A stretch of 64,000 nucleotides of DNA from Thalia democratica (lineage: Eukaryota), in assembly GCA_965202585.1 (NCBI GenBank), contig OZ241829.1, positions 28,954,001-29,018,000 on the forward strand, read 5' to 3'. A program made the translations under genes and the position numbers. Below are positions 1 to 31,316 of this stretch, piece by piece; position 1 is the first letter of the stretch; each line of letters opens with the position of its first letter. The notes under the pieces are model-generated. The model saw only the letters and a list, made by a program, of their open reading frames with translations. It searched no databases and was not told the DNA's origin.

Positions 1-39
1 AACATGTTTTTATTATTATATTATATTTTCTACTTTTAC

Positions 40-140
40 TGTTACCCGTAATTCTTGGTCGGTAACTGGTTCTCGGGTTTGGTCGGGTGGGAATTGTGCG
101 CAGACGGGAAATGATCGCGGGTTGGAACTAAGCGGTTCCC
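40..140. repeat. GC-enriched non-coding segment resembling a subterminal-repeat transposon fragment
   Basis: Repeated cggg/gggaa/ggtt motifs, no splice-bounded ORF found. Confidence 0.25.
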
Positions 141-1477
141 ATAAAACTACAACTTTACATGTTACAACAGTTTTAAATATAGTTTGTAATTATAATGTTT
201 AAAATCAAAAACGTTTTACTAAAATATTATAAACTGAAGGCTCTCATTTCATTTTTTAAATTCAAACTCACAAAGTTCAATTTTTCGTTTAGTTTATTAT
301 CATAATTATACAGTTAGTAATTAAATTAATCTTTTATACTTGATACGATATAGTGCAAAAATGTATATACAAAAAATATTAACAAATATTTAAAGTAACG
401 CAGGCTTTAAGACTAAAGTATGACTTTACGTAAAATAAAAAAAACAAAAATAAAGTAACGAAAAATTTACAAAAACAATATTGGCAATCAACATGTATAA
501 ATGAACAAATTGACGTTTTAAAAGGGGAAAATAAAAAATTAATTATTAAAAATAATGGGGCAATTTGCAAGGCTATAATTAGTTTTTACAAGGTAAGATA
601 TAACAAGAGATACGATTAAAACAAAAGTTACATACATAAAAAAATAAAAAATAGATAAGAATTCTATGTACAGTATAACCATGGTACTTTCTGATACCTA
701 ATGGCATTACAGAAAAATTGTGTGCTCGAAAACAAGGTACAATAAAAATAACAAAATAAATGTTTCAATACTACGTTTTAAAGATTTCTAGTATAGATAT
801 TTTCGAAATAAAAATTGAGTTCCAAAAAGCTACATTGTGTTGTATAAAGATAATGTTTTTAACCGAAAACATAAACCATTAGTATTTGTGACTCAACAAA
901 ATTTTTATTGATTATTACAGTAAATTAGTCACTGTCAAAAAGATAAAGTGCAATAAAAATCTTTTCCAATTCTAGTTGCTTCTAAGTATTATAATGATCA
1001 AGTTAACACAAAATCCCTACAGTATGCAGTACAAATAAAATTTAAATTCCATTTGATGCAATAAATCTTACTGTGAAAACAAGTTGGTAAACGGTTTCAG
1101 AAATACATTTTTCTTTTAAAGTAGTAAAAAATTAAATATTTACAACAAAATTAGCTGCACTGTTTGCAGTTTGGATGAAAAGACAATGGTAAGAGTCAAG
1201 TAGCTCCCTTTAAGTACAAAAATAATTTTACACAAAAATAAAAATATTAAATTGCATAATGAACTCGATATGTACAATAAAAGTTTTAGTTTACGTAAAT
1301 ACACAACAAAAAATAAACGCATTCTTTTTGGAGAGACACGTTCAAACAGAGGCTTAGTGCGAAATAGTTTACAAAATTTACGATGGATTGGTATATTGAA
1401 AAAATCTGCTTAAAAAAGCTTTCTTTATATTACATACATCAGGGTTTTCTTGTCGCAGAAATGCAAGTTTCGCCCAA

Positions 1478-1565
1478 TTACACGTTCGAACTCGCGGGGT
1501 TCAGGGGCTTGTTGTCGCTAACCTCTATGACGTCATCATCGTCTTCGTCCAACAAGTCCGGGAAA
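1478..1565 (-). CDS. Integrin exon 24 (acidic cytoplasmic tail, stop)
   Basis: aaaaag|T TTC CCG..; (H)[28 protein letters not shown]; phase 2 matches the exon 23 donor; GC-rich island. Confidence 0.8.
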
Positions 1566-4500
1566 CTTTTTAAAATGTTTAACCGGTTAAGCTTTTTATA
1601 GTTTAAAAATAAGACAGAAGCACTACTGTATGTTACGTGAATCTAACAGCGCGTCCAGTCGATAAAGCATGTTAAATATTATACAAAAAATAAAATACAA
1701 CAAAATATTTGTTTAATTAAAAACTACCTTTTTAAAGATATTTTACATAAGATATAAAAATCCACATTTATATGTAGTTAGACTATTTTTTGTAAAAAAT
1801 ATAAATGCTAAATTAAAAAATTCGCAAAACAATTACAGCAAAACAACAAAAACAAACAAAAATTAATTAAAGAAACGCTAATTTCTAAACTGACTGTTTT
1901 CTCTTGAAGAATCCGCATTTGAAGAGGCAGAATATGATGAGCACGTAAACGATGAGGGCGATCAGTATCGCTATCAGGATGTACCACCACGGGAAGACTT
2001 GCGCCTCCGAGTCTATTTCGATCGCCTGGTCTATCTCCGTTATCACCTGTATGAAGGATATTGTTTGATGCATTTTTTACAAAATTCGAGTCAATCTATT
2101 TTTACTTTAAAAGTTGTTGTGTATGTTGTGAGGCAGTTGTTTTGCTGGTTTCATAATCACTAAACATTTTTTATTTACTGTTGTCCTGCGGCTATTATAC
2201 TATCATTGTTACTCGTCAGTATGAAAGAAAAACTAATACATGCTTATCACATTGCTAATGTTTTTTTTTTCATGTCATATTCTACTAACATGTAAGTTGT
2301 AAAACTAACAGAAGCCTTGAAACCTCATTTAACTTTTTACTTTTTTTCAAACTGATTACCAGTTCAAAAGTTAGTGTGTTGCACTTTGCAAACTTAAAAG
2401 TCACAATAAATTAAACATTCAACTTACGGAAGCCTTGAAATCTCCGACGATCCTGACATTTTCCTTGACGCTCTTGACTTCCGCATCCGATCTCACCGAT
2501 ACGTCCTTGACGTCGATGAACTCCTCCAAGAACGTGTAGTTCCACACTCGGGACTGTTTTAATTACAACAAGTAAAAATGCAAGTGCACTGGTTTATTAA
2601 GTCCACACACTTGAGTTCCAACACTCGCGACAGTTGGAAGTGTAACAAGTAAAATGTGACATATACAAGTTTACTAGTTGTACACTTGAGACTTAAAAAT
2701 GCAAATGTATTTGTTAACGCCAATATAAAAAGACATATACTGGTTTACGTTACAACCCTAAGAAAATAAATAAAAATATGACATGTACTAGTTTATGATA
2801 AAATATGAGAGCATAATACTTTACATCAAATACAGCGGTTTACGCAACACTCATAAAAATAACTAGTTCAACACCTTAGACTGAAAAGTATGTAAAATAT
2901 AAAAGGTATACTTGCTTACGTCACACTGCTGAAAAAAAAAAACGTAACAAGTTATCCGCTGTACGTCGCTGACGAGTAGCGACCAAAACTATGTTTTACA
3001 GATTGCAGCCAGAACATTTAGATAAAGTATTTTAAAAATAGAATAGATTATATTTAGTATAATTTCATATACTCTTTGACTAAAACTATTAAAAAGGTTT
3101 GTATTAGTTTAAAAAAACAATTTTTAATACATTTTCAAATTAACACATCTTTCCTTTTTACCTTACTTTTAGATTTAGCTAGTCATTGCACTCAGATGAA
3201 ACATACCTCAAAATTAATATTTCAAGTAATCTAGGTAAGTGTACAAACAATGTGTAAACTACTCACCGTGAGCTCAACGGTGGCGGTCTTTTTAGAGAAG
3301 AGTTCTTCCAAGTAACACTTGACCTCTACGCACCTCGCGCCCAGTTCGCACGTGATCGCACTCTCGAATCCAGAACTCGACTGTTAATTGTGTTTAATGT
3401 ACTATTTATTTTTATTATTTTTTTATTGATTCTCAGTTTTAGGTTCTGTCGTGCAATTGTAGTTTTTTTGTTTTTAATTAATAGCTTTTTGTTTTATACT
3501 AACTTTAATATCGTCGAAAAAAAATTAGGATTATTAAATATTAAAAACGCATGATTTAAAGCTTCGCTTTGAAAAGATTAAAGCTAAAAATTTCAGTTAA
3601 ATAATAGTCATCTGTTTATGGATGCACTTTTTTACCATGCATTGCTTTAGACATAGCATTTGTTATAAAAAGTTTTCGTACAATTATTCGCTTAAATTTT
3701 ACAACACGTGCTAGTTTTGAATTTTTTCAATACCTTGGACTTGTACTTTATGGGCTCCTTGCCCAGCAGCTTGGCGTAGGATACTTTTATATCGTCCTCG
3801 GACAAGCTTCTCGGTCTTCTGGACTCAGCAACACCGATCGACTTGTTGAAGTTTCTATCCGCATTCTCTTTGTCCGCGCCTGTGTAAAAATACTTAAATA
3901 AAAAAAAAAGGTTTAAAAAGAAACTGAAATACAATCTACTAGTATACTGAAAAATTGTTTGCAATACTTTGTTTCGTTGTTAGTATAAAATGAATAAATC
4001 CATAATTAAAAGACAAACATCTAATACATGTAAAATTTGTAACGAAAAAATCTACTGGTTTGTTATTTGATTTAACTGTTTTTTAAAAATGAGTTCTTAA
4101 ACGACAAACAATCAATAAAAATTAAAAACTTGATAATTAATAATAAACAATGATGCATGTTATTTTTAAATTAGTTATTGAATTCATACTACGTATTTAC
4201 TTATACACTAATTATTTTATCTGCATAGTAAAACTTCTACAGACTTTTGTAGTTAAAATGAAAACTTGTATGCTTTGATAAAAATAAGTAAGTAACCATT
4301 TACTTAGTCAATACTTAACTAAAATTAAATAATGCAGGAAAATAACGACTTTAGTATGAGTGAAAACAATAAAATTTTAACGTTTGTTTAATTTTGCACA
4401 AGTAATCTTATAGAGATGACACAAAATACATTAAGGTTTCAAACTATAAACAAAAAATTATTTGTCCATTTTAATTTACCATAATTTGAATTTAATCAAC

Positions 4501-7500
4501 GATATAAAAGGTTTTTCAAAGACATTATGAAAGTAAAAAAAGTACTTAAAATTATTAAGACATCAAATAATTTATTGAGGCAGTATTAGTTTACAAATTA
4601 CAAATAGCTTCACATACACACGATTATCACAAAAAAATAACCTCCTTATATAGTCCAGCTCTCCATCAACTCGGCTGTAGCTTTTTATTGATATAATTTT
4701 GGTTTTTACAAAATATTATACTAACTCAGTGCTTGAAGGTTAGACATTTATGAAAAAAAATGATTACACCATATAACCCGTATGATAAATTTTTTTCTTT
4801 TAGTGTATATATATATATCAAACAAAACACTGACCCAGTCCGTACTGGTTCACGTTCACGTACGTCTCGTCGCACCTTCCCTTGATCGACTTGTCGAACC
4901 CCAGCACCCTCGTGTCGGAGAGGTACATCAAGTACTTGCCGTTGTACAGCTCGAGCGGGAACTGCACCGACAGCTCCAACCCGGTCGCCACTTCGGTGCC
5001 TGTAAAATATTTTTTTTAATTTAATATAGTTTTAACCAATTAAAAAAAAAAACAAATATTTCTACATCCACTCCAGTACTTGGTGTTTGTAGTTTTTGTT
5101 AACTACTAAAACAATATGATGGCGGTTGGCATGTTTATATAAATGAAGTTTAAACAAAATAAGTTAAATCGTTTTTCGTTTATAGTAAGAGAAAACATCA
5201 GTTTCAGGTGGTAAAAACATTTTTTAAAATTATTAAGAGTAAATATATTGTATCAAATCAATTTAAGTATATCTTTAATACGACCCGCAGTTTACCGACC
5301 TATTTATTAGCCAATGGGTGGCTTTACAAGCTGTTGTGTCTAAAACTCACTTGACAACTATTATTACAATTCACAAATTTTATGTGCAACAAAATTATAT
5401 TTTGTAGTTTTTAGAAAAATTAGTAACTTTTTAGCAAAAAAACTTAATGTTATTAAAAAAAGAGCTGTCATATATTTTTCTCAAAACGAAACATTAAATA
5501 TCAAAACTAAATTGCTGAAACCTATATGTGAATTTGTACTAACTTAAGAAGTTACATTTAAGTTAAAATTTTCTGATAATGCTTTAACGTAAAAATTATC
5601 GTATAGTTTTTAATCTATTTAAGCCAGTAGTAAAAGAGTTTAAAACAATAACAATATATCAAAATTTATACGCCCCTTAGCTTGTAAACCTACTTGAAAA
5701 GCTTCTATAACTGAAACAAAAAAAAAGTGATTCACAGATTTTTTTGAACAAAATGTAAACAAAAACAAACCGTTGTTTTGAACGAAGAAGGAATAGGAAA
5801 CTTGTGGTCCAATTCTTTCCAGGGTTCCCATTGCAGATTCACCAACGATAGGGTTGTTGTAGTAACGGACCTGCAAGAATTAAAAAAATATAATTCTTTG
5901 TTTAATTTACTTTATATTCAACAAACTTAAATATAGATTAAATACCGTTTATTCTTAGGTTCGATTTTTTGCTATTTAAATAATTATGGTCGAAGCTTAG
6001 TTTAACACATTATTAGCAGTTTAAATTAGTCATTTACACTTAGGTTGTTATAGTAACGGACCAGTGTACAAACATAAAGGTTAACAGCAAACCTTAAAAG
6101 TTATTGCTGTTCTAATAATGTTAATAGATATTTTGATAAGATTATAACTTAAAAAGATGTTCATAATGTTCAGTAATGTAAGGCAGTGCCATTTAGTTTT
6201 AAATAACTGTATATAATGATTTTTTTTCCGTATCTAATAAAAGATATTTAAAAACATTAAGTAAGTAAACTATTTGAATTGTTTATTAAAAATGCAAAAA
6301 AAAAGTTTTGTAAATTTTATACTTAAGTATATTTTCAAAACTTTTTGCATCTGGCATAACATACATTAGGCATACAACAAAAGCTAAAATAAAAACTATA
6401 AAGATAAACGTTTGCGACCGTACTTTGCGTTGGTAATTAAAACTAAAGCTTCAAAGTAAAAGATAAACCCTCATATAACTTTAAAGCAATTAAGTTGACT
6501 GTAATACATTGCACTGCGCTCTATGCAACTGAATGTTTTGTGTTACCCTTTAATAATGAACAATGGTTTTAAATAAGTACTGCACTGTACATGTTTTGAG
6601 AATTTTTTAAATATTACTAGAACTTTAACTAGGTTTATATATTTAAAGCTAAGCAGTAAAAATGCTTTTATACTTAAGACAAAATTAAACTATAAGCAAA
6701 TTGTACTATCCAGTTAAATAACTTGTACTTATCAAAAACTCATTGCAACCTTTTTTGGATTAGTGCTAAACTTATTTATTCTATTTTTTACAAATCGTTT
6801 TCAAATTTTCTGTGTACAAGTACTAGAAAAAAATATATATAGCTAAAATTTAAGCTGTAATTATACTTTTAGTAAATTAGTAAAAACTTTACAGAAAAAA
6901 TAAAAAATTAATTTAAAGTAAGGATTACAAATTAAACAAAAAACATCAATATACGATTTTTATAGTATTTATTTATTTCACTTCTTAATTTATCAGCTGT
7001 ATCACCTCTCAACTTGTTTGGGACTTTCACTACACTTAATTATCTTATTTTAAAATTATTTAAATACCAGTTGACTATATGTGACCAACTGATTAATATT
7101 TAGGACTTTTACTAGATTCATTTATTCTACACTTTATCTATTTAAACATCAACTGATTTTATTCAACTAATCGTTATTCTGGCTTTAGACTTATTTAATC
7201 AATATTCGATTATTCAGCCTGCCGAACCTGTTTAGGGCTGGCGCTGGACGTGACGATTATGTCGTGCTCCACGACGACCCTGGTGGTCATCTTCTTCACC
7301 ATCGTCCTGTTGTTCATGCTGGTGGTCGAGGTCCTGTACTCGAACACCAGCTCTTTCGTCTCAATCGAGAGCGATCTCTCCACGAACTCAATGTCTATGG
7401 ACGAGACTTGGTTGCGGTAGAAAGGGTTGCCCAGGTCGCATATTACCTCGAACGCTGCAAATTAGGTGATAAGTATATAAATATCTTATTATATAAAGTT

Positions 7501-10500
7501 CATTTAGTTTGCTTTTTTGGGAGTTTAATCTTAATTCTTGGTTATCTAGTTTACATCATACTTGCTCGTATTATCTCGGAAGTATGGTAAAATGTAAGCA
7601 CGATAGTTTTTTCTTCTTATGTAATTAAGTAAATCATAATAAATTCATTATTAAGTTATTTTCGATTATCTATTATTAAAACATACGAAAGGTTATAATA
7701 AAAAATATGTATAAAAAATATCTTTAACATCTCATACGCTGGAAGTGCAGTCAAGTTTTGATAAAGTTATTAATGTTTACAAATTTTAAAAGCAACAAAT
7801 GCTCCTGTATTATTTAAAAAAACCTAACAACCTAATAATTTGCAACAACTCTAATAAATAAGTATTTTCATAAATTAAGTTCAAATAGTTTGTCTTTCTT
7901 GCTGTTTAGCTTTATTTTATTCATTAAAAATCTACATGAAGTAGTTGAAAGTCAGTCGTATAAAGTAACATGGTTGTTAACACACAACTTGTTATTTTTC
8001 TATAGCTACACAAATTATTAAATCATGCAAAAGTTTATGAAAAACAATGAATTTACTGATTTTACTTTAAAAAACTTATTTGTTGACCATAGGTTATTCT
8101 AGTTTAAGTATATTATTCTGGATTTTTTGTCATAGTTTTGTAATAAAGAAGGGCTTAACTAAACAGTAGTATTATGTATTTATTCATTCATACAAAACAA
8201 TTATTGCTGAGTAGTGATAACTAAGCTTTTATTTAAACTTAGCTGATTTACAATATCAACCTGTTTAACTTAAGATGATATCTTATATGATTGATCCTTT
8301 TTGTCAATCTGTAATTAATTATTTGGATTAAAAATGCATGAAAAACTCAAAGAGATGGCAAGTTTGATCAAAACTCGGATTAACAAACTTACCATAACTT
8401 AAAACAACTTGATAAAAAAACTATATATACAAAACAAGCGCCGTTATTCAACAAAATATTTCTAAACACCAAAAAAGAAAATTTAAAAGGCAATGTTTAA
8501 ACCTTTTTTGAATTTAAATCAACCTAACTTACTTGTAATCGACCATTAAAATTACCACAAACCTAAAACGACTTAATAAAAATTCTACATCCAAACAAAT
8601 AAAAAAAAGCTTGATAAAAACTATCTGAACGCCAACGCACCTGTAGAGGGCCTGCACGACACGGTTGAGTTCACACCGGCATCGAAGTTCTTGTACAGCA
8701 GGTGTTCAGAGTGGTCGATGTACAGTTTGGCCTGGTGTGCCTCTTCGCCCGGGTTCGTAACTTTTATGTTGATCGGCAAAGAGGGAGCATCTAAAACACA
8801 ATATTTTGTTTGTATATTTTTAAATTATTGAGATTGTAATTTTTCTCTTCAACTTTTGAAGGTCGATTTAAACTGATAGCTTTTGTGACCAGTTAGAATC
8901 ATTAATTTTTGTTTCACGTGAAATACAATTGTATTGTTTGATTTTTTATAGGTTTTATAGTTTCTAACAGTTTAAATAAAAAGTACTATCTATTTAAAAG
9001 ATAATGTGAAGTAAACACTGAAATGTGTTAGCATATTTGTATTACAATCAACACAGTCAACTCACGGTAGATGTATATATATTGATAGAACTAGCAGTAT
9101 ATTTATACCATACATCAACTCACGGTACAAATGTTCCTCGGGCGCCGTTCCTTCCGCGCTCAGCCTGCTCTGGCACACGTCGTCGTCCCCGCAGTCGTGC
9201 AAGATCCTCACCTCCTTCTCGTGCCTCGACTGGTAGTCCTCGTCCAGTATGGGGTACCTGACCATGTCCACCATCTCGGCGCCGATTGGTTCCGGCTCGG
9301 GGACTTGGTCGTCCGACGCCAGGCTGTACTCTGTGTGACGTCATAGCGAGTAAAAGTGACGTCACATTGTGTAAAAGTGACTTGGTAATTGAGTTTAGAT
9401 AATTGGTAATCACCAAGTTAGTTTGGTTGAATGTTCATTTGTTCGTCAAAAATACACAAGGAGTGCTATGTATTGTGATTATTAAGTCAGTTTGTTGAGT
9501 TTTAATAAAGCAACTTTAAAAGTTAAAACATACTGAACAGGTAAAAATAAAGTTTCAAAATGTTGATCTTAACTGCTATCCTCTTTTTAACACAAACTGT
9601 ACTCTGTGTTTAAATTTTTTGAGTTGTTTGTTTTGTATCAGTTTTAGCGAAGCAGATTTTGGAAAAGAAATAAAAATAAAAGGATAATGATAGAGTATTG
9701 AAGTTTATATTTAATTTATAAAAAATGCTATGAATCATCATAAATCGTTGATTTTTGTCAGGGATAGACGTTTTGTGATATTACTAAAACTAAATTCATT
9801 ATGACGTCACATGTAAAAACTATTACTCTTATTTTTACAACTTGAAACTACCGTTTCACGTTAGTTATAAACTTTGTATGTGACGTCATAATGTGCCGTC
9901 TTGCTGACATATGAATTAAATTCTCTTAAAGTTCAACAATTTTTTAATTTTTAATTTTATAGTCACTAGATTGAGGTTTTGTAGTTTTAAGTTCAAAATT
10001 TCGAATGAAGTTAGATTTTTGCACTAATACGCTTTAAACAGAATTTGAAATTACGTTAAAATACTTTTCTTTTTTCCTCTAACTTGTTTACTCCTATACA
10101 GTAATATTTGAGCTTTTATTTTTGTCCAAATAGCTGAAGATTGTAGCAATAAGCTACATGAAATAATTATACTTTTTTTTTGAAGTATTTTGTTATATAT
10201 AAAGTATATATATATAAATATATATAATTAAGAAAGAGAAAGCACTTTCAAAGATTAGAACTTTAGTACTAGAACTTTACCAAGCTAGTTATTTGATTAT
10301 AGTGTTTTGTTTTTTTTAAAACATTTGTTGCAATTGTTTTAACTTGTAGCCAGAAAATTAAAATTCATTTTAATTAAAAAAATTAAGAGTGTAATAAGCT
10401 CTTACTTTATTAAAGTTCAAAGACTTTATTACTTTTGACTTGATAATTTAACTTTCTCTTTTTAGTGTCTAGAAAAATTAAGATTTTACTGTAAGTCCTT

Positions 10501-16500: not shown

Positions 16501-19500
16501 TTTGAAACTTGTTTATAAACACTCTGTTCAAATTATTAAAAAGAAATCAGTTTAACTATAAAAAAATAGGTTTTAACAACAAATATTTTTTTGTACTACA
16601 TAAGTTTAAGTAATAATAGATAAAAAATAAAGCTTTAAGTAGGTCAATTATTTTTCAAAAGTAATTTTTTTTGTCGTATTACTTTATTAATACTTCTTGT
16701 AGCTACAAGCAAGCTATTCAGTTAAAATCAAATATAACATGCAAAAATATATAAATGTTGATTTGCTTTTATCAGAATCGTCATTAAAATGTTAGTAAGA
16801 AATAAACTAAATTTTAGGCATTGATTGTAATTACCGAAAGTAATTGTCTTTACTGTTACACTAATCAATAATATAAGCAACTTTTACTTAAATTTAAGGC
16901 TTTTTAATTATCATTAAGATAAAAGTATAATTTCGTTTTAAAAATTGTATAAAAGTTTAGTAATTAAACTAGTTTAAACGTTCTCCGTGCAATTTTACTT
17001 TTATTTTTCATTTAACTTAATACTAAGCATGATTCAAAAGCATTTTGTTTAAAAATAAATTAACAAAACTAAAGTCCGATTGCTGTTTAACCTTTTTAGT
17101 TACTTAACTAAAAAATAGTTGAAAACAACATCGCATAATTAAAACTATCTTTTCGTTTCTCAAGTTGTTCACAGCCGAAAACTAGACTATACTTAAACAA
17201 AATTGCAACTCGTAAAAATACAACCCATTAGATTTAACAGACAACTCAAAAACTTAAAGGGGTAATACTTTTACGTTGAAAGGCGCACTTGTAATAATTT
17301 TTACAGTAAGCAAAACAAAGTCCAGTCTTTTTCACATAAAAACCAAATTTCCAATTAATTAGTTCAAGTAACATATTTACATGAGATTTTTAGCTTAAAA
17401 TAGAAATTAGTAACAGTTTAACCAATTTAAGTCGCAATGCTCTGCCCAACGCGTCACTACTACTTAACATACTCTATATTTTTAATCGCTCAATTGAACT
17501 AGCTGTTGTTTTCTTATTAGCAATACTCATTTAAACTTTTCATTTAGTCATTAACTCATTTAGTTCTCCAGACATACATCGTGTTTCTGCAAATTACAAA
17601 CAAATTCGAGCGTCTACAATTTATTGATAGGAACATTTCAAATTGCATATTTTCAGTCACAAATTAACACAACAGCCACAAGTTATTCACAAGCGCAGAG
17701 TAAATCAAAACACTTTTGATTTTTTAAATTTACCTTCATCTGTAGTCAGTCCACCTTAAATACACAACTTTAAATCAGTCCTCTTTCAAATATTTTTATA
17801 CTTTAAGGTCAGATGTAATTTTTTTTTCAGTTTTAAGGCCGCTTCGTGTTCATATTTAAACTTTTTGGCGTGTATTTTTTTTAGTGGTTGTAATGTAACC
17901 ATATTTCGAGCAACAGTTATTTATAAAAAACATAATTGAAAACATTCTTACTTTATTAAACTTAATACACCATGTAAGTTTTCATCGCCAATCAAATTCG
18001 TCAGAGTTCATATTTATCACTAACTACTTTGCATTTAATCTACCACCAGTTTTTTAATTGAAAAGTATAGAAAAAGTACTTTTGTCATGCTTAAGAAGAA
18101 AAAAGATCAACTGTGATAAATTAAAATGTCTTTTTAAGTAACACCCCGTATAATATTAAAATTATGATAGTAAGGAAAAAGTTTTGTATAGTCTATTTCA
18201 TCATTTTATTGTGAAAAGGTTAGTATATTTTAAACAAAGTTAGAAATGTTTATTAAAGAAGAAGCTTTTAGTTTGAAATCTTAAAAACATATCCATCTTG
18301 AAAAAAAAAAAAATAGATCATGTACTTGTCTTTTTTAAAGTTGATCATTCTACTCTAATATTTTTTATTTATATACCTAATATTTAATTAAATCAATTGT
18401 CAGCTACCATGCAAATTATTGTTTTCTTACCTCCTCGTGTCTTATAGTAGAGTTCTGTTGAATTAATTATTACGTCACATATACTACACTGCATAACAAT
18501 ACAAAACAGTGAAATTACAAAAATTATTATTTTTTAGATAAAAATAATTTTGAATTATTTACTCTTAGCTAAGATGATAAATTATAAATAAGTAAACAAA
18601 ATGAATTATGAGATAAAAAACAACATTTAATTGCTTATACTACTTATTAAGTTTGTTTAATATACTTTTTATTAATATATGTTTTTAAGCAACTTACTTT
18701 CTGAATATTATCTCTTATAGTCAAATAATAAAAACTTTGAGTTTGTACGAAATTAAAACTGTTTATAGCAAAATCTAAACTTTAATTTTGTTCTATTTTA
18801 TTAAACATTTATACATAAACTTATAAACACAAAAACAACTTGGTGTTGAACTTTTTTTATAAATAAATAGATATTACAAAAAATACAGTAATCAAGGTAT
18901 ATACTTAAGCCTGAACAAAAACAAAACTTGTGTGTACAAACGACAAAAAAAAAGTGACACAAAAACGTTTCGACAAAACAATTAGCACACGTCAAACCAA
19001 CTTTTAACGAAGAACACCACCCCGCCCGTGAAGTTGTACCTGGGAGCGCCACTTATCACCACTTCGCCCAATTCGGCGTCGAACATGTTGCGGGTGATCG
19101 CCACCGAGAAACCGTTGTACGAGTCCTTCTTCATGGGAAACCTGTTTGTTTTAATGATAATAAGTTGTAAAAATATAAATAGCTGCATATATCAAGCTAA
19201 AGGTTTGTTAATAGGGATCGTAGCGAGGCAAGTTCGTTTGTATATATAATGAAAAGAATTTGATTAGCCATTTTAAATAATGTTAAACAAACATTAAAAT
19301 ATTTGTCAGTTTAATAAAAAAGTACTGTGCAAATTGTTTTTGCTATTAAGAAAAAAAAATTAACAAAAACCAATTTGAATTTTCCAAGCTTTGGTTCTTT
19401 TTGTTGTGATGTAATTTTTTTTGAAATTGTTAGTGCAGCATAGCTCTAAGGTACGAAAGAAAGAGAGACAAGATTAACATGCACAAGTTATTTAAAAAAA

Positions 19501-22500
19501 ATACACAAAATTGATGATGGTGATTTAAAACAAATTAACGTACTTTGCATTGACGATGGACTGCCACAGTTTCTGTTCCTCACCGAAGAACTGCTTCTTC
19601 AGCTCCTGGTAGAACACGCTTCCACGCCACTCGAGCGCACCAGGTCCCCCTGTGACGTAACAAAAACATTTAACATGTTCAAACCGACACTCAATTCTGA
19701 TATATAGTACAAGAAAGAAATTTTTATATTTATATGCATAGTATGTTGAGGTTTTTTGATCTTATTGTTAGTTTTTGCAAACAAATCATAGAGCTTAACC
19801 GTTATCATCATAATCAAATCAAAAAGAAAGGGCGAGAAAAAAATTTAAAAAGGAAAGCAACTAAATTCTACTTCATTGACTGTATAAACACAGCAAAGTT
19901 GCCATAAGGGCACCCGCATGGAGCCAAGTAGTACTTGTAGTGGTTATTATAAAATTGATTATTAAAAATTAAGTCAACTCTAGTTTATAGTACAAGTAAA
20001 AAGTAATTGATTTATATTTAAAATATGTTGAGAAACTGCAACCTAAGTTTTGTAGAAAACAAAACCTACAAGTTGGTAATGGAAATTAAAAAGTACATAA
20101 ATAGTAAATTATTTTTAAAGTAATACTTCTTGGTTGAGAGGATCTTCTTCATTCTTAATCTTTTTTATGTAATAAACAGTCAACACTCTTGAAATAAATA
20201 TATTGGCAGCAAAAAAAGTATAACTAAATGCTAAAAATTCAATTACATAACAAAATGTATAAACAGAATGCCTTAGACCACTTTATTAATGAAACTTGAG
20301 TTTAAATGTTATTTTCTATTAGTTTGCAACCAATTTGCATAAATAAAAACCAACCGACTATGTAGGAACCTCTATAAACAGCTGAATTTATTATATATAT
20401 TTTAATTTTAAAAGACGAGCAAAAACCTTCACTGAAAAAATAAAATGACTCAATTTCTTTCTTTTCAAATATATTTCACCAACTTATTCATTCAGTAAAG
20501 TTAGTGATGAGTCTGATGTTTAATCTGTTAAAACAAAAAATCAACTGTTTACGTAGGAACCTCTACGAACAGCAATGTTCATTCCTGTTTGTGTTAATTT
20601 AAAATTTCAAACTACCGACCGACTGCGTAGGATCCGTTCCCATTAACCGCCAGGCTGACCCCAGGTTGCCCGTACGCGTACCCGTACTTCTTCCACGTGG
20701 CGCCCACTAGCGTCTCGCCCAGTTCGCAGAAGTTCTCTGTAAAATAAATAACAATTAGCATTTTTACAACGACAGCTCATCAGACAAAAATGCTGAAAAA
20801 AAAACAGAGCGAATAAATAAAAATTAAACATTGAATGTTTTGTTAAAACAGTTGTAAGATAAGAAGAAGTTTTCTGTAAAGATAAATGAAACCAATCAAT
20901 TAATAGCACTTTCACGCATGAATGGTTTTGTGTAATATACATAAAGTAAGCAATAAGTTGCTAATATCTATATTTTATTGAAATTTTTATATCTGTAAAA
21001 TAAGATAAGTAAGACCATTCTTTTAAAAATAGTTTCTTTCATGTACGGATAGTTTTTTTCTTTATGTATAGTATTCCATAAGGTGCTAACTTTACTGTTT
21101 TAGTGAAACTTGAGGAAATTGACATTTTTGTCTGTCGAAACAAGTTTTTTAAATAGAACAAATATTTTAAATTTCGTGTATTTTATGATGAATAAGATAA
21201 AAAAGAATTGCGATTAGATTTATTTTCTAAAGAGTTAAAGCAAGCTGCATAGTAAAATATTTCTCAGTGTTTCAACTCACATAAGTCCTCTATATAACAT
21301 TAGCAACAACTTTTCTGTGTATAAGTTGTGATACCATTATGCTGCTTTTACTCAAACTTAGCGCGTTTGAAAGTTATATTCAAAATACTAATCATGTGTT
21401 AAGTATTAATATTTAACTTACGAAATTAAGCTAGTTTTTATGAAATGTGTTTACTATCTATGAATAGTTTACGATAACATAAATTTATGTTATCATATAT
21501 AAGAGCAGTAAATCAGTTCTTATTCAAATCCAGTAAATTTAAATCTGTATGTATAAATTTATTAACTTTTTTGAATTTGTAATATGGTATTGACATTAAG
21601 TTCTTTCTTGTTATAATGGTTTGTAAAAAAGTGCAGTTTTTAACAAACTTGTTAAAAAAAAAGGATTAATTACTTTTATAACACCATCAGAAAAAAAAAC
21701 AGTTACAGTTTTATTCAACATATTTATTTTTATCACACTTTTACAAAATTTACAATAATTAAGTTTGAGATTAAGTTAATTTATACACGAGATTTCATTT
21801 TTGGACATGATAAAATTATACAAAAAAGTATTTCTAGTTACTGGTAAACGACAAGCAGCAAAAACACTACAGTTTTTCTATAAACAATTGTTAATAGTTA
21901 CACAAGTTCAAACGAGCTTACAAAATATTAAACGTTTCAAAATACAATCTACTGACATTCATAACAACAAAACTCATCTTTTTAAGTGCTTTGAGCTTAT
22001 GTCTGTTGATTATGATTTTGTTTTATTTATAAGATAAAGGAGGAGATACTTTGAAAACAGAATAAATTGAAGCTTGACTATTTTAAAAGCATTTGTAAAA
22101 GTAGTTATTATACAAAATACATTTTTAATGCTGCACTTCATTTATTTAGTTACAATAACATCGTGTTTATTTATGATAAACATATAATTGAAGCGAAAAC
22201 TTGCAAACTATTTAAGTATGTGCACTATAGAGAAATAAAAGTTTGTGTTTATATACTTTTAATTTATAAATTAAATAATAATAAAATAAATACAATAAAA
22301 CAAACAATAAAAATAAATGTTTCTACTAACTTGTAGCAAGGTTTTCCTCATCTTCTTTTAAACTATAATCAGTTCCTGTGAAAAAAGTATACTTATTAAA
22401 AAAATTAGAAAGTTCTGGGAAATAGTATACTTGATAAAAAAAATGCAAGGGAATAATTTTTAATCAAATAATTGCTTGCTTAAGATTTTATATTTAGTTT

Positions 22501-25146
22501 TATATTTCAGTTTAGTTGAACTTAAAAAAACATTTATTAAAAGAATTTTGTTGTGAACAATTATTAAGTTGTTTTTAACAAAGAATAAAATATAGAAAAC
22601 TTTAAGTGTTTGTTATTAGTACTTCTTGTTATCTACTAGATACATAGTAATTAAAAAACAACTTAGTTTGTTTTTAGTATAAAAAAGTGCTTTTTGCACC
22701 GTGTCAGTTAGAAAACAATTTCAAACTTTTTATAATATTTTGCATTATAAATAGCTATACAATGCAACTATAACAAAGAGGTAGCTCATTATCTAGTGTT
22801 ACGGTTTAAAAAAGTAGATAGAGTGTAAACAAAAAGTTTTGAATGGAATCAATTTATTGTCAAGTTTCAAAACAGTTATTTTTTTTGCAAAGACTCTTTA
22901 GTAAAATAATATTTACAAAACGTTATTTTTACCCCAATTCACTAACCATCAAGGGCAAAACACTTTCCACAAATTCTCATAGTTTCTTTTTCTTCCTTAT
23001 CTTTAACCCCGTGGATTCTGTGAGCGCAAACCATCACACGCTTACCAATACCTAACAATTAATATTCTTATTAGAACTAATTCTATTTGTTTAAGAATAA
23101 AACTTAATTGTTTTTGTAAGTCAGCGTGATTTAAAAGGCTTGTAAGGTATTTATTTTTTATATACCTACAAAATATTTCCCATATAATAGTTCATAAAAT
23201 AAAATTCTAGTAATTTTTCAATAACCAAATTTTATAAAACATCTTAAATAAATAATTTAATAAACTTAAATACCTTAAAACCGATTCCCATATATTTTTT
23301 TATGAAAATATTTCCTAGTGGTTTTTCAATAACTTAAAATTTTTGATTGTTTTGTTTTTGTATAAAAACACGACTGGTATACTATTTTTAAGTTTTAAAA
23401 TAAAAATTGAAGTACTAATAGGTGTTTTATGTAATGTAGGGACACACTTTCTTTTAAAGAACTTGTAATACTACTTATTGTTTGAATTAACAATTACTGT
23501 TTATAAACTGAAGTTTTTGACAGATAGTGTTATCGATGACTACAGATAGTTTTTAATTGTTATCTTGGACATGAAAAACCTTATTTATGAAACATAGTTT
23601 TAGTTAGCTTCATCATAGTACAACAAAAAAATTTTAAATTTCAAAATTATAGTTAGCTAACTAATATGTTATATTAGATTAATTGAGATTAAAACGTCAA
23701 AAATATCTCTTTGTTATAAAGTTCTTTCTCCTTTGGGAGTTATACTCTCAAAAAGGTAATAACGTTGTATCGACGAAATAAGCATTGTAACACAATATAA
23801 ACTATAAGTAAGTTGTATAAATAATATAAAAACTACAATTCTTTGATGAAACATGTTTAATACAAAGCTCAAAGACTTTAAAAGCCGTTAGTTTTCAATA
23901 GCTGAAAAAAATTATTTATAGTTCAGAAGTACATACAATAAAATAGATAAATTTATCAAAAAAAGCCGAGTGAAACTAAAACCAACCCTGGCTCTTCATT
24001 GAAACTCCCAGCCACTCGTCCGTTTTGTTCCACGTCACGGTGCTTCCCCCTTGGTCCACCTGAACCCTCGCGCAGTCCTGCCGCTGGGTGGTGTAGGGGC
24101 AAGAGTACACGCCACCAGGGGCGGTCGAGAGCGGTTGGCTTGGCAACGCGGTGGCGGTGGGCGCCCCAATCGCGAACATGCTCGAACCCGGTTCTGTATT
24201 GATGGGGTTATTATATTTATTATATTATTTTATTTATTTATATTTTATTTATTACCAGCTATTATAATTGCAAATATCTATTATATTTAAGTTTATAGGT
24301 TCTTAAAAAATCAACAAGGTTATAATAAAGTAAATTTGTATAAAAACACCTGTTTCTTTTATGAAAGATTTAAAAGTATCAAAAACTGCCTGTGTTCTGA
24401 AAATATTTAAAAAATAGTTTAGAAATAAAATGCTTCTTCTTTTGTAACTTAAGAATGAAGGAGGAAAACTGAGAGCACAAGTGTGAATTTAAATTTGACT
24501 AGTTGTTGAATGAACTAAGGGTTTAATTTATAGTTATGGAAAGTTAGATAAATTTTTGTAATTTTTAAAAGTAAAATGTTTGATATTTTCTCAAAAAAAA
24601 GTTTTAAGAAACCAAAAGTGTATTGAATTATGTTTATAAAAAAAGTTATAAAAATTGTAGTGCTAGTTGTAGGTAACGATTTAGAAAATTTCTGCTCATT
24701 TTAAAAAAACTTCTGAAGAAAGCCAAAAGTTTAATAGAAAAACTTAAAAATACTTTTTAGGGTATAAAAATTATTTACACTTTGCAGTTACTCAGTAGCA
24801 ACACGCAGAATATTTAAGTAGATAGTCAGCTAAGTAGTCAGCTTTATTAAACAAACATAAAAAAAATTAGAACTAGCTTGAAAACTGTGTTGTAGACAGC
24901 TTTTAAAGTTTAATCAAAATTTTAAAATCAAACAACTTTGTATTTCTAAAGGCAAAAAAAAAACGCTTTCTTTCAAGAACAGATACTTAACAAACCATTT
25001 GATATTTTGTGCATGACCGTCGAATAACCGAACAGCGATCCGTCGACTCCCTTCTTGTAGTAGGGTAGCCTCTCCTCGAAGCTGTACCCGTGTGTCGTCA
25101 TGACGACGCATGACGTAATCACCAGCACCAGGCACAGTGACGTCAT
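1478..25146 (-). CDS. ITGA: Integrin alpha subunit (no I-domain; laminin-receptor PS1/alpha3-6-7-like), 24 coding exons, 1094 aa
   Basis: All 23 introns are GT-AG with compatible phases; exon lengths sum to 3285 nt with no internal stop. Motifs: signal peptide [20 protein letters not shown] repeats (SLFGYS..AIGAP, SYNGFSV..SGAPR, SSFGYS..VGAPQ, SFFGQT..IGAPK), Ca loops [27 protein letters not shown], genu CGDDDVC, RRPR furin site, [32 protein letters not shown] and VGESAM resemble vertebrate alpha6/7 (from memory, not searched). Confidence 0.95.
1895..2046 (-). CDS. Integrin exon 23 (transmembrane + GFFKR)
   Basis: catacag|GTG..AAA CA|gtcagt; [50 protein letters not shown]. Confidence 0.95.
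2428..2553 (-). CDS. Integrin exon 22
   Basis: aaacag|TCC CGA GTG TGG..GCT TCC|gtaagt; [18 protein letters not shown] (calf-2). Confidence 0.92.
2571..2930. repeat. Degenerate tandem repeat (about 6 units of 40-75 bp) in integrin intron 21
   Basis: Recurrent aaaat(g)tgacatatact(g/a)gtttac..acac(t/c)t(g/a)ag units. Confidence 0.55.
3267..3380 (-). CDS. Integrin exon 21
   Basis: taacag|TCG..CTC ACG|gtgagt; [38 protein letters not shown]. Confidence 0.92.
3734..3879 (-). CDS. Integrin exon 20 (contains RRPR heavy/light-chain cleavage site)
   Basis: acacag|GC GCG..TCC AAG|gtattg; [25 protein letters not shown]. Confidence 0.9.
4835..4999 (-). CDS. Integrin exon 19
   Basis: ttacag|GC ACC..CTG G|gtcagt; [41 protein letters not shown]. 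Confidence 0.92.
5771..5870 (-). CDS. Integrin exon 18
   Basis: ttgcag|GTC CGT..AAC G|gtttgt; [33 protein letters not shown]. Confidence 0.92.
7228..7454 (-). CDS. Integrin exon 17
   Basis: ttgcag|CG TTC GAG..AAA CAG|gttcgg; [22 protein letters not shown] (calf-1 CDLGNP motif). Confidence 0.92.
8641..8790 (-). CDS. Integrin exon 16
   Basis: ttttag|AT GCT..ACA G|gtgcgt; [30 protein letters not shown]. Confidence 0.92.
9124..9330 (-). CDS. Integrin exon 15 (genu)
   Basis: acacag|AG TAC..TAC C|gtgagt; [32 protein letters not shown]. Confidence 0.95.
10734..10817 (-). CDS. Integrin exon 14 (AT-rich)
   Basis: tttcag|GT GAA..CTA G|gtatgt; [27 protein letters not shown] supplies the thigh C..(D)KL(D)PI motif; 27/84 GC. 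Confidence 0.85.
11568..11725 (-). CDS. Integrin exon 13
   Basis: ttgcag|A TAC..TCT G|gttaga; [28 protein letters not shown]. Confidence 0.9.
13452..13586 (-). CDS. Integrin exon 12
   Basis: tttcag|G TCC AGA CCG..CTC AA|gtgagt; (R)[20 protein letters not shown](K). Confidence 0.92.
14647..14824 (-). CDS. Integrin exon 11 (FG-GAP 7)
   Basis: tcgcag|GA ACG..CTC AG|gttggg; ..[25 protein letters not shown].. Confidence 0.95.
15432..15583 (-). CDS. Integrin exon 10 (FG-GAP 6)
   Basis: actcag|T GAA GTG..AGA G|gtttgt; [50 protein letters not shown]; this is the only in-frame phase-2 acceptor. Confidence 0.9.
15818..16025 (-). CDS. Integrin exon 9 (FG-GAP 5)
   Basis: aaacag|GC GTG..ATA GC|gtgagt; ..[38 protein letters not shown]. 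Confidence 0.95.
18431..18454 (-). CDS. Integrin exon 8, candidate 24-nt symmetric microexon
   Basis: caacag|AA CTC TAC TAT AAG ACA CGA GGA G|gtaaga; phase 1-1, (K)LYYKTRG(G); the frame is also kept if it is skipped. Confidence 0.6.
19002..19141 (-). CDS. Integrin exon 7 (FG-GAP 4)
   Basis: aaacag|G TTT CCC..AAA A|gttggt; [32 protein letters not shown]. Confidence 0.95.
19544..19649 (-). CDS. Integrin exon 6
   Basis: tcacag|GG GGA CCT..GCA AA|gtacgt; [34 protein letters not shown]. Confidence 0.92.
20620..20736 (-). CDS. Integrin exon 5
   Basis: ttacag|AG AAC TTC TGC..GTC G|gtcggt; [38 protein letters not shown]. Confidence 0.9.
22331..22375 (-). CDS. Integrin exon 4 (45 nt, AT-rich)
   Basis: tcacag|GA ACT..ACA A|gttagt; [14 protein letters not shown]; phase 1-1, fills the acidic linker expected before the FC motif; 14/45 GC. 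Confidence 0.72.
22947..23051 (-). CDS. Integrin exon 3 (AT-rich)
   Basis: tgttag|GT ATT..GAT G|gttagt; [23 protein letters not shown] supplies the conserved V.CAHR..G.C motif. Confidence 0.92.
23987..24193 (-). CDS. Integrin exon 2 (FG-GAP 1/2)
   Basis: atacag|AA CCG..CAG G|gttggt; [33 protein letters not shown]. Confidence 0.95.
24996..25146 (-). CDS. Integrin first coding exon (signal peptide + start of blade 1)
   Basis: ATG at 25146; [51 protein letters not shown]|gtttgt. Confidence 0.92.
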
Positions 25147-31025: not shown

Positions 31026-31316
31026 CAATCACTTGTGAAACGCACTCTGCACTGAGGACAAGGTGGAGTTCTGCTCAAACCGCTCCCTTGTGCATCCCTC
31101 GCAGTAAACGTGGTCGCAGTCCAGACGCATCTTCCCTGCAACAACCCCGTCGATGCAGATGGTGCAGCTCGCGTACACGCAGTCGTCGTCGGCGTCGTAA
31201 CAGGGGAACCTGTCGACTACGGAAGCGGGAAGACCGTCGTTCGGCTGGTGCTCGTCTTCTGGGTCGAGATCCACCTCGGAGTCGTCAAGTGGAAAACGCC
31301 GTAAAGTAGAACACAT
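31026..31316 (-). pseudogene. RING-HC finger ORF with +1 frameshift (probable pseudogene or sequence error)
   Basis: ATG 31316 ..GLPASVVDRFP..CTICIDGVVAGKMRLDCDHVYCEGCTRERFEQNST; removing one T at 31060/61 continues as CPQCRVRFTSD and completes the 8 Zn ligands; bounded by ttctacag| (31332) and TG|gtgagt (31026). Confidence 0.75.

What the first reader, a model, noticed from the sequence alone, without database searches (positions are those of the whole stretch)
1478..25146. Bimodal codon usage between exons of a single gene
Hand counts of GC3: exon 19 51/54 (94%) and exon 15 60/68 (88%), against exon 3 12/34 (35%), exon 14 8/27 (30%) and exon 4 2/14 (14%). The switch is exon-by-exon and sharp at the boundaries, with very AT-rich introns throughout. 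GC-rich exons are full of CpG codons (TCG, ACG, GCG), so they are not CpG-depleted. Translational selection acts on the whole mRNA and cannot easily explain this. The low-GC exons are among the shortest (45-105 nt), while the neighbouring LU and paralog genes are AT-rich. This points to a DNA- or chromatin-level process acting on individual exons, such as nucleosome or exon-definition marks, local gene conversion, or exon replacement (inference).
Basis: partly seen in the sequence, partly recalled or inferred. Interest (0 to 1): 0.72.

Follow-up and report, generated by a model that had tools for sequence, protein, structure and literature searches.

The report
Exon-by-exon codon switch in integrin gene
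Within one integrin gene of a very AT-rich marine tunicate genome, exons longer than about 105 bases use almost only G/C-ending codons while the four shorter internal exons use intron-like A/T-ending codons. This is real, RNA-supported and unexplained by ordinary whole-message codon selection.

Summary
The stretch is a minus-strand integrin alpha gene of the alpha-6/PS1 type: 23 coding exons, 1086 aa, all GT-AG.

- **Composition.** Third-position GC (GC3) is about 0.78 in 18 exons. It is 0.34, 0.13, 0.29 and 0.45 in exons 3, 4, 13 and 17, which are 105, 45, 84 and 100 nt long. Introns are 24.5% GC.
- **Statistics.** Heterogeneity gives chi2 = 135, p = 3e-18, and amino-acid content does not explain it. 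All four internal exons of 105 nt or less are low and all 17 longer ones are high (p = 1.7e-4). Strict bimodality is not established from 23 exons.
- **RNA.** A spliced RNA contig joins exons 2 to 7, so AT-rich exons 3 and 4 are in the message.
- **Cause.** Evidence favours a bias acting on the RNA. Preferences are strand-asymmetric and codon-specific, intron flanks show no GC spill, and silent sites of exon 2 diverge much less than its introns in a relative. Gene conversion, methylation and exon replacement fit poorly.
- **Open point.** Why short exons escape is unresolved. Splicing-linked relaxation is my best guess.

First-stage notes of this scan report the same pattern on other DNA of this genome. 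I found no paper describing it.

The parts
24996..25146 (-). Integrin alpha exon 1 (ATG, signal peptide), 151 nt, GC3 0.74
   Evidence: Gene model. The exon 1-2 junction is supported by an X4 loose end at 24194.
23987..24193 (-). Exon 2, 207 nt, GC3 0.78
   Evidence: RNA joint 23985|23049. The GC island is conserved in relatives from marine (Tara Oceans) metagenomes; third positions differ at 4/69 sites against about 21% or more in the flanking intron.
22947..23051 (-). Exon 3, 105 nt, AT-rich (GC3 12/35 = 0.34); encodes the conserved CAHR...C.C segment of the beta-propeller
   Evidence: RNA joints on both sides.
22331..22375 (-). Exon 4, 45 nt, AT-rich (GC3 2/15 = 0.13); acidic loop
   Evidence: RNA joints 22946|22374 and 22331|20736.
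20620..20736 (-). Exon 5, 117 nt, GC3 0.79
19544..19649 (-). Exon 6, 106 nt, GC3 0.71 (the shortest GC-rich internal exon)
19002..19141 (-). Exon 7, 140 nt, GC3 0.81
18431..18454 (-).
   Evidence: X4 loose ends at 19002 (two contigs carry it, one runs directly into exon 8). Coordinates.
15818..16025 (-). Exon 8 (FG-GAP repeat), 208 nt, GC3 0.83
   Evidence: Pfam FG-GAP E = 5e-13. PDB integrin alpha-6. Model.
15432..15583 (-). Exon 9 (FG-GAP), 152 nt, GC3 0.57; follows the shortest intron (234 nt)
14647..14824 (-). Exon 10, 178 nt, GC3 0.75
13452..13586 (-). Exon 11, 135 nt, GC3 0.80
11568..11725 (-). Exon 12, 158 nt, GC3 0.72
10734..10817 (-). Exon 13, 84 nt, AT-rich (GC3 8/28 = 0.29); conserved thigh-domain segment (C...L.PI.I)
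   Evidence: No RNA was laid on this part.
9124..9330 (-). Exon 14, 207 nt, GC3 0.88
8641..8790 (-). Exon 15, 150 nt, GC3 0.68
7228..7454 (-). Exon 16, 227 nt, GC3 0.84
5771..5870 (-). Exon 17, 100 nt, GC3 15/33 = 0.45; conserved calf-domain segment
4835..4999 (-). Exon 18, 165 nt, GC3 52/55 = 0.95
3734..3879 (-). Exon 19, 146 nt, GC3 0.69 (basic RRPR motif)
3267..3380 (-). Exon 20, 114 nt, GC3 0.68
2428..2553 (-). Exon 21, 126 nt, GC3 0.76
1895..2046 (-). Exon 22 (transmembrane helix, GFFKR), 152 nt, GC3 0.74
1478..1565 (-). Exon 23, coding part 88 nt up to the TAA stop, GC3 0.73; GC falls to about 0.22 from 40 nt past the stop

Best explanation
The genome is under very strong AT-biased mutation. 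Introns and other free sites sit at about 25% GC.

In this gene, G/C-ending codons are held at about 78% by a fixation bias that acts on the transcript, that is, selection on synonymous sites for codon optimality and/or RNA processing and export. The scaled strength is about 2.3 relative to introns.

That bias operates exon by exon. It is near full strength in exons longer than about 105 nt. It is almost absent (about 0.4) in the four shorter internal exons, whose third positions have drifted to intron-like composition.

My best guess for the exemption is that closely spaced splice junctions, and the purine-rich GAA-type enhancers these short exons carry, replace the need for G/C-rich codons. 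This would be splicing-dependent codon usage, here amplified by extreme mutation bias and probably a very large population.

**Shown:** the composition pattern, the RNA support, the strand asymmetry, the synonymous constraint in exon 2, and the dependence on exon structure rather than on the peptide.

**Inferred:** that the force is selection on RNA, and why short exons escape it.
For: 1. Third positions of the short exons (T .34, A .32, G .12, C .22) resemble the intron sense strand (T .39, A .37, G .12, C .12).
2. In long exons the C-over-T preference (87%) exceeds the G-over-A preference (71%), p = 1.8e-4. The same holds in paralog C6 (78% against 55%, p = 1e-6). Introns are strand-symmetric.
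3. Preferences are codon-family specific. Thr is 94% and Leu 95% G/C-ending at four-fold sites, but Gly only 53%. Arg is AGR 29 against CGN 7. NCG codons are favoured.
4. There is no GC spill. Intron GC is 0.29-0.34 within 20 nt of the GC-rich exons. The 120 nt before the ATG are about 0.38. GC is about 0.22 from 40 nt past the stop.
5. The constraint is ongoing. Exon 2 third positions differ at 4/69 sites from a metagenome relative, while the aligned flanking intron differs at about 21% or more.
6. Exon structure matters, not the peptide. Homologous segments inside the giant exons of C6 have GC3 0.68 against 0.73 for the rest.
7. Among the 17 long internal exons, GC3 rises with the summed length of the flanking introns (rho 0.67, p = 0.003).
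8. Short exons carry 57 GAA per kb, against 23 in long exons and 14.5 in introns.
9. Precedent: splicing rescues the expression of AT-rich coding sequences in human cells, and GC4 falls as exon number rises (PMC7181179).
10. The AT mutation pressure is plausible from reported losses of base-excision repair genes in thaliaceans (PMC13746493).
Against: - Within long exons, GC3 is already 0.79 at 15-30 nt from a junction. A simple distance-to-junction rule therefore fails, and an all-or-none per-exon rule is needed that has no demonstrated mechanism.
- The intronless paralog C1b is AT-rich (GC3 0.24, and 0.23 in a relative). The spliced paralog C1a has open frames of 370-420 nt, presumably long exons, at GC3 about 0.26-0.28. 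A gene-level factor such as expression is therefore also needed, and it was not measured.
- In paralog C8, matched exon segments of about 140-160 nt have low GC3 (0.35-0.43). Length is a tendency, not a law.
- The length threshold rests on four short exons in one gene. The flanking-intron correlation is one of several tests on n = 17.
- No polymorphism spectrum, expression data or tRNA gene counts could be obtained.
Confidence: 0.5

Rival explanations
1. A DNA- or chromatin-level process targets exons. Well-positioned nucleosomes, or splicing-coupled marks such as H3K36me3 on exons long enough to hold a nucleosome, would recruit repair that is less AT-biased. Long exons of germline-expressed genes would then have a higher equilibrium GC, and short exons would not.
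For: The exon is the unit of the effect. The threshold (about 105 nt) is of the order of a nucleosome. The 18 long exons are homogeneous. The intronless paralog C1b is AT-rich. Unchecked first-stage notes describe 3'-rising GC3 in other genes of this genome. Intron GC near GC-rich exons is slightly higher than near the low exons, about 0.27 against 0.21.
Against: The bias is strand-asymmetric although the introns are symmetric. It is codon-family specific: Gly, Arg AGR, Ile ATA. The 5' leader and the sequence past the stop are not GC-rich. Exons of 106-117 nt are fully GC3-rich while intron GC is 0.29-0.34 in the adjacent 20 nt. The spliced paralog C1a has long AT-rich exon-sized open frames.
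Confidence: 0.17
2. GC-biased gene conversion is confined to exons. One route would be repair templated by spliced RNA or cDNA, which needs a minimum length of homology. Another would be outright exon replacement or conversion from processed copies.
For: The edges are sharp at splice sites. A length threshold would fit a minimum homology requirement. Intron-poor integrin paralogs exist in the genome.
Against: Gene conversion is strand-symmetric, whereas the bias here is asymmetric and codon-specific. The probable untranslated parts of exons 1 and 23 are not GC-rich, although the transcript ends were not mapped. The paralogs are only 25-50% identical, too distant to act as conversion donors. 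No duplicate copies of exons 3, 4 or 13 lie nearby.
Confidence: 0.07
3. Ordinary translational selection acts on the whole message. The low exons would be chance outliers, alternatively spliced minor exons, or exons whose amino acids do not allow G/C-ending codons.
For: Codon-specific preferences with a C-ending bias are typical of translational selection. GC3 differs between paralogs at the gene level. A beta-binomial fits as well as a two-component mixture.
Against: Chance is excluded (p = 3e-18), and so is amino-acid content (each p <= 5e-5). Exons 3 and 4 are in the assembled transcript. Exons 3, 13 and 17 encode conserved core segments. The separation by exon length is perfect (p = 1.7e-4).
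Confidence: 0.08
4. Long AT-rich exons would be riddled with cryptic splice and polyadenylation signals, or would be taken for introns. G/C-ending codons would 'harden' long exons, while short exons cannot harbour a usable cryptic intron or exon. This is a specific variant of RNA-level selection.
For: The risk grows with exon length. The giant exons of C6 are GC3-rich. U-ending codons are avoided most strongly at two-fold sites. GC3 rises with flanking intron length.
Against: AT-rich exon-sized open frames of 370-420 nt exist in the spliced paralog C1a. C1b, a 3.4-kb AT-rich reading frame, shows little depletion of AATAAA (4 observed, 6.8 expected). GC3 is high from 15 nt inside the exon edges, where cryptic sites should be harmless.
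Confidence: 0.13

Closest known systems
Splicing-dependent codon usage (Mordstein et al. 2020, PMC7181179)
   Same: G/C content at silent sites depends on exon-intron structure, and splicing compensates for AT-rich coding sequence. In humans GC4 falls as exon number rises. Here GC3 is low where junctions are densest.
   Different: In humans the effect is a modest gradient, and single-exon genes are the most GC-rich. Here it is a near all-or-none switch between neighbouring exons of one message (0.13-0.45 against 0.57-0.95), and the intronless paralog is AT-rich.
Introns as barriers giving step changes in coding GC (Ressayre et al. 2015, PMC4684703)
   Same: Nucleotide and codon composition changes in steps at introns rather than continuously along the gene.
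   Different: In plants the steps form a 5'-3' decline, attributed partly to GC-biased gene conversion in the external gene regions. Here low and high exons alternate along the gene and follow exon length.
Differential exon-intron GC architecture for exon definition (Amit et al. 2012, Cell Reports; recalled from my own knowledge, not read here)
   Same: GC-richer exons lie in long, GC-poor introns. GC3 rises with flanking intron length.
   Different: That model does not predict that the shortest exons lack the GC differential altogether. The contrast here is also far more extreme (exon third positions 78% GC against 24.5% in introns).
Trade-off between translational codon bias and splicing enhancers near exon ends in Drosophila (Warnecke and Hurst 2007; recalled from my own knowledge, not read here)
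   Same: Codon bias is reduced at exon edges. Here GC3 is 0.64 in the first and last 15 nt against about 0.80 inside. The short exons are rich in GAA motifs.
   Different: The edge effect here spans only about 15 nt, so it cannot explain exons of 84-105 nt whose centres are also AT-rich.
Compositional description of thaliacean genomes (PMC13746493)
   Same: Thalia democratica is reported at 790.7 Mb and 25.3% GC, with coding GC about 17 points above the genome, a broad GC3 distribution, and loss of smug1, MUTYH and MPG in thaliaceans. These figures match this genome (802 Mb, about 25% GC).
   Different: That paper works at the level of genes and species. It does not describe an exon-level mosaic or a link to exon length.

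Membership tests
Integrin alpha subunit (laminin-binding alpha-6/alpha-7/PS1 type) | FG-GAP repeats of the beta-propeller | tested here: met
   Pfam PF01839 E = 5e-13 and 1e-10 on exons 8 and 9. PDB integrin alpha-6 E = 2e-15.
Integrin alpha subunit (laminin-binding alpha-6/alpha-7/PS1 type) | Ig-like thigh and calf domains, one transmembrane helix and a GFFKR motif; full-length alignment to known alpha subunits | tested here: met
   PF20805 and PF20806 hits. KCGFFKRK in exon 22. 30-31% identity over residues 31-1065 to vertebrate alpha-6/alpha-7, with alignment.
Exon-intron differential GC architecture | Exon GC clearly above flanking intron GC in a GC-poor region with long introns | tested here: met
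   The 19 exons with GC3 above 0.5 have 48-64% GC. Introns have 24.5% GC and are 234-2976 nt long. This is not met by exons 4 and 13 (31-32% GC).
Translational (whole-message) codon-usage selection | Codon-specific preferences that differ between amino-acid families | tested here: met
   Gly 53% against Thr 94% G/C-ending; C-ending 87% against G-ending 71% at two-fold sites; Arg AGR over CGN.
Translational (whole-message) codon-usage selection | Bias uniform along the message apart from sampling noise | tested here: not met
   chi2 = 135, p = 3e-18. The low exons remain deviant after adjusting for amino-acid content.
Translational (whole-message) codon-usage selection | Bias scales with expression and matches tRNA gene supply | not testable with these tools
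GC-biased gene conversion | Strand-symmetric AT-to-GC bias that affects linked non-coding DNA as well | tested here: not met
   The bias is asymmetric. Intron flanks are at 0.25-0.34 GC.
Germline CpG methylation footprint (CpG-depleted exons) | CpG observed/expected well below 1 in the affected exons | tested here: not met
   CpG o/e is 0.78-1.5 in the GC-rich exons and 0.85-0.95 in low exons 3, 13 and 17. The 45-nt exon 4 holds no CpG, which is uninformative at that length. NCG codons are favoured.
Alternative or mutually exclusive exons with relaxed codon bias | Low-bias exons are skipped or have tandem alternative copies | tested here: not met
   Exons 3 and 4 are in the assembled transcript. 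No duplicate copies lie in the introns. Exons 3, 13 and 17 encode conserved core segments. Exons 13 and 17 were not covered by RNA here.

The most novel reading that the evidence does not exclude
In this salp, the need for G/C-ending codons is switched on or off for each exon as a whole. The switch would depend on exon architecture (length, junction spacing, flanking intron length), through a splicing- or export-coupled mechanism. Because mutation is so AT-biased and the population so large, the rule is written legibly into every gene. That would make this genome a natural readout of how splicing and codon choice interact.
Probability: 0.35. Interest if true: 0.8.

Novelty: new variant of a known kind. 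Interest (0 to 1): 0.62.

Why it matters
Whether silent-site composition in animals reflects selection, biased gene conversion or mutation is a long-running dispute. It is usually argued from weak gradients.

Here neighbouring exons of one message, with the same transcription, the same chromosomal region and the same introns, differ from about 0.3 to about 0.8 in third-position GC. That holds most confounders constant.

If the dependence on exon length holds genome-wide, as many unchecked notes of this scan suggest, salps would offer a strong natural experiment on splicing-dependent codon usage. Intron loss or gain between species would provide built-in tests.

For annotation it also has a practical side. 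GC-island-based exon finding in this genome will systematically miss short, AT-rich but constitutive exons.

Tried and rejected
- **The search of protein representatives** with the FG-GAP exon returned only multi-repeat proteins, none identifiable as an integrin ortholog. It gave no useful homologs.
- **An alignment of P0151 with the 23 exon translations,** meant as a trick to search with the spliced protein, came out badly misaligned. I did not use it.
- **A genome-wide test through CCT chaperonin genes** found their exons with PF00118. I did not try to get it by another tool.
- **Exon models for the intron-containing integrin paralogs** could only be sketched from profile hits. Their exon boundaries are too uncertain for a clean test of length against GC3. 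They do show that the mosaic exists in them, and that length is not the only factor.
- **Searching the ortholog of exon 2** gave only metagenome contigs of about 550 nt, too short to reach exon 3.
- **The run search listed no run on record as RNA**. Run X4 nevertheless proved to hold spliced contigs.
- **The variant table** lists only 40 of 243 differences. Divergence in exons 3 and 4 against the introns could not be measured.
- **Explanations considered and rejected:** boundary (edge) effect; amino-acid composition; mutually exclusive exon copies; CpG methylation decay; the idea that the peptide segments themselves favour A/T-ending codons.
- **Two literature searches** returned nothing relevant.

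Full report
**What is there**

The window is about 25% GC throughout. Between 25146 and 1478 on the minus strand lies a complete integrin alpha gene.
- Single exons hit Pfam FG-GAP and the integrin Ig-like domains 2 and 3.
- The best solved-structure match is integrin alpha-6.
- Exon 22 encodes a transmembrane helix followed by KCGFFKRK.

I rebuilt the gene from open frames, GT-AG sites and frame continuity. It has 23 coding exons, 3261 nt and 1086 aa with no frame break. The spliced protein aligns over residues 31-1065 to vertebrate alpha-6/alpha-7 at 30-31% identity. It has no missing or extra blocks relative to human, gar, nemertean and fly homologs.

**RNA support**

The run search listed no run on record as RNA. 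Run X4, from the same coded organism as the best DNA holders, nevertheless holds an 850-nt contig. That contig lies only on exons 2, 3, 4, 5, 6 and 7.
- Its joints skip exactly 935, 571, 1594, 970 and 402 nt, with GT..AG ends. These are my introns 2 to 6.
- Its loose ends reproduce the end of exon 1 and the start of exon 8.
- Two other contigs instead continue from exon 7 into a 24-nt in-frame microexon at 18454-18431.

The AT-rich exons 3 and 4 are thus part of the assembled message. Exons 13 and 17 rest on homology, frame and splice sites only.

**The observation**

- Eighteen exons lie between 0.68 and 0.95 and are mutually homogeneous at 0.78 (p = 0.057).
- Exon 9 is at 0.57 and exon 17 at 0.45. 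Exons 3, 13 and 4 are at 0.34, 0.29 and 0.13.
- Overall heterogeneity is chi2 = 135, df 22, p = 3e-18.
- Introns total 20.4 kb at 24.5% GC. CpG observed/expected is about 1 in exons and 0.79 in introns.

Three trivial explanations fail.
- *Edge effect.* In long exons GC3 is 0.64 in the first and last 15 nt and 0.79-0.82 further in. The centres of exons 3, 13 and 17 are still only 0.35-0.40.
- *Amino-acid content.* With each low exon's own amino acids and the codon usage of the long exons, the expected G/C-ending counts are 25.5, 11.9, 20.6 and 25.2. The observed counts are 12, 2, 8 and 15, each with p <= 5e-5.
- *Intrinsic property of the peptide.* In the intron-poor paralog C6, the segments homologous to the four short exons have GC3 0.68 (73/107) against 0.73 elsewhere.

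'Bimodal' in the strict sense is not established. A two-component binomial mixture (0.39 and 0.78) fits no better than a beta-binomial (BIC 166.0 against 164.2).

The separation by exon length, however, is perfect. All four internal exons of 105 nt or less have GC3 below 0.5, and all 17 longer ones are above it (Fisher p = 1.7e-4). Among the 17 long internal exons, GC3 also rises with the summed length of the flanking introns (rho 0.67, p = 0.003). This is one of several tests on n = 17 and should be treated as suggestive.

**Which organism**

The assembly is 802 Mb. An intronless integrin paralog has relatives at 86% and 68% identity. The 86% relative, and a 60%-identical relative of paralog C6, were traced to marine metagenome contigs, one of them from Tara Oceans. 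The closest named proteins are vertebrate alpha-6 at about 29%. An earlier agent note calls the organism a tunicate.

A 2026 comparison of 38 tunicate genomes reports Thalia democratica at 790.7 Mb and 25.3% GC, with coding GC about 17 points higher (PMC13746493). I therefore infer a salp, most probably that species. This is an inference, not a test.

The same paper reports that thaliaceans lack smug1, MUTYH and MPG. That loss is a plausible source of the extreme AT mutation pressure.

**What kind of force holds GC3 up**

Four lines of evidence point to the transcript rather than the DNA.

1. *Strand asymmetry.* In the long exons, two-fold pyrimidine-ending codons are 87% C, but two-fold purine-ending codons are only 71% G (p = 1.8e-4). 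Paralog C6 shows 78% against 55% (p = 1e-6). The sense strand of the introns is symmetric: A .370, T .386, C .121, G .123. Gene conversion, or repair acting on duplex DNA, should treat the two transitions alike.
2. *Codon-family specificity.* Thr and Leu four-fold sites are 94-95% G/C, but Gly only 53%, with GGA the commonest Gly codon. ATA (20) far exceeds ATT (5). Arg is AGR 29 against CGN 7, even though CpG-containing GCG, ACG and TCG are the top codons of their families.
3. *No spill-over.* Intron GC is 0.29-0.34 in the 20 nt next to GC-rich exons. The 120 nt before the ATG are about 0.38. GC drops to about 0.22 from 40 nt past the stop.
4. *The bias is active now.* Two metagenome contigs from a relative carry exon 2 with 93% protein identity. 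Third positions differ at 4 of 69 sites (3 of 69 in the second contig). The BLAST-aligned intron flanks differ at roughly 21%, and the ortholog keeps GC3 at 0.81-0.83 with flanks at 10-30% GC.

The third positions of the short exons (T .34, A .32, C .22, G .12) are close to intron composition. The simplest reading is that the bias is almost absent there, not that an opposite bias acts. Expressed as a log odds ratio against introns, the bias is about 2.35 in long exons and 0.43 in short ones.

**Why short exons escape**

This is not resolved.

A known relative of the pattern is splicing-dependent codon usage. In human cells, splicing rescues the expression of AT-rich coding sequences, and GC4 falls as exon number rises (PMC7181179). 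In plants, introns produce step changes in coding GC (PMC4684703). The short exons here also carry 57 GAA motifs per kb, against 23 in long exons and 14.5 in introns. That fits reliance on purine-rich splicing enhancers.

I therefore favour a per-exon relaxation linked to splicing or export. Several facts limit this reading.
- A simple distance-to-junction rule fails, because long exons are GC3-rich from 15 nt inside their edges.
- A gene-level factor is also needed. Paralogs range from GC3 0.24 to 0.64-0.80:
  - C1b, intronless: 0.24, and 0.23 in its metagenome ortholog.
  - C1a, spliced, with short introns and exon-sized open frames of 370-420 nt: about 0.26-0.28.
  - The two C5 genes, C8 and C9: mosaics of 0.2-0.8.
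  - C6, with two giant exons and one intron of about 60 nt: 0.64-0.80.
- In C8, matched exon segments of about 140-160 nt are low. Length is a tendency, not a law.

**Rivals**

A chromatin-coupled repair bias remains possible, at about 0.17. Such a bias would involve nucleosome or H3K36me3 marking of long exons in germline-expressed genes. It explains why the exon is the unit of the effect, why the size scale is nucleosome-like, and why the intronless paralog is AT-rich. It does not explain the strand asymmetry or the codon specificity.

The other readings fit poorly:
- Exon-confined gene conversion or exon replacement, because the bias is asymmetric, the probable untranslated parts are AT-rich, the paralogs are too divergent to be donors, and no duplicate exon copies exist.
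- Methylation, because CpG is not depleted.
- Alternative splicing of the low exons, because exons 3 and 4 are in the transcript and the low exons encode conserved core segments.

**Relation to the rest of the scan and to the literature**

First-stage notes on other windows of this genome repeatedly describe exon-restricted GC3 islands, and GC3 that follows exon length. These notes are unchecked, and I treat them as leads that the pattern is genome-wide. One note claims that the shift bleeds into flanking introns; in this gene it does not.

I could not test other genes.

In the paper library I found gene-level descriptions of tunicate GC3, but nothing on an exon-level switch or on its link to exon length.

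**Verdict**

I rate it a new and extreme variant of known splicing-linked compositional effects. Its mechanism is still open.

Noticed in passing
window 18431-18454 (-): A 24-nt in-frame microexon in intron 7, which would replace Ser with KLYYKTRGG. It is present in two RNA contigs of run X4, while a third joins exon 7 directly to exon 8. It is therefore alternatively spliced, just before the FG-GAP repeat encoded by exon 8.
   Followed up: partly
window 15665-15694, 6029-6061, about 2320-2345 and 9070-9095 (-): Short intronic 'ghost' copies of exon edges together with their splice site. Examples: [10 protein letters not shown]|gtgagt lies 128 nt downstream of the end of exon 8, and VRYYNNLSV lies about 160 nt upstream of exon 17. 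Copies of the donors of exons 21 and 14 also occur. They look like small tandem duplications of exon-intron junctions.
   Followed up: partly
L001:3756-7130 (-), i.e. G000 C1 about 64.62 Mb; ortholog L021:147-3509: An intronless 1125-aa integrin alpha paralog with uniformly AT-rich codons (GC3 0.24). It is conserved at 86% and 68% protein identity in relatives. The 86% relative lies on a Tara Oceans metagenome scaffold and is equally AT-rich (0.23).
   Followed up: partly
L002 about 5530-8850 (+), i.e. G000 C6 about 22.57 Mb; ortholog L022: An integrin alpha paralog with two giant exons (about 2.0 and 1.3 kb) split by a single intron of about 60 nt. Its GC3 is 0.64 and 0.80 in the two exons. 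The 60%-identical metagenome relative has no intron there and has GC3 0.51.
   Followed up: partly
window 31032-31322 (-): A GC3-rich (0.72) exon of at least 291 nt encoding a RING-finger-like Cys/His pattern. It shows that not all neighbours of the integrin gene are AT-rich.
   Followed up: no
window 1895-1900 (-), end of exon 22: If intron 22 is retained, the frame ends after KRKQSV. The acceptor of exon 23 (ttttaaaaag) is weak. Alternative cytoplasmic tails, as in vertebrate alpha-6 A/B, are possible.
   Followed up: no
window 30-162: A 133-nt island of 47% GC with no evident reading frame at the very start of the window. Its nature is unknown.
   Followed up: no
run X4: This run is listed with kind '?' and not as RNA. 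It nevertheless holds spliced, exon-only contigs of this gene at depth of about 400, so it is usable as transcript evidence for this genome.
   Followed up: yes
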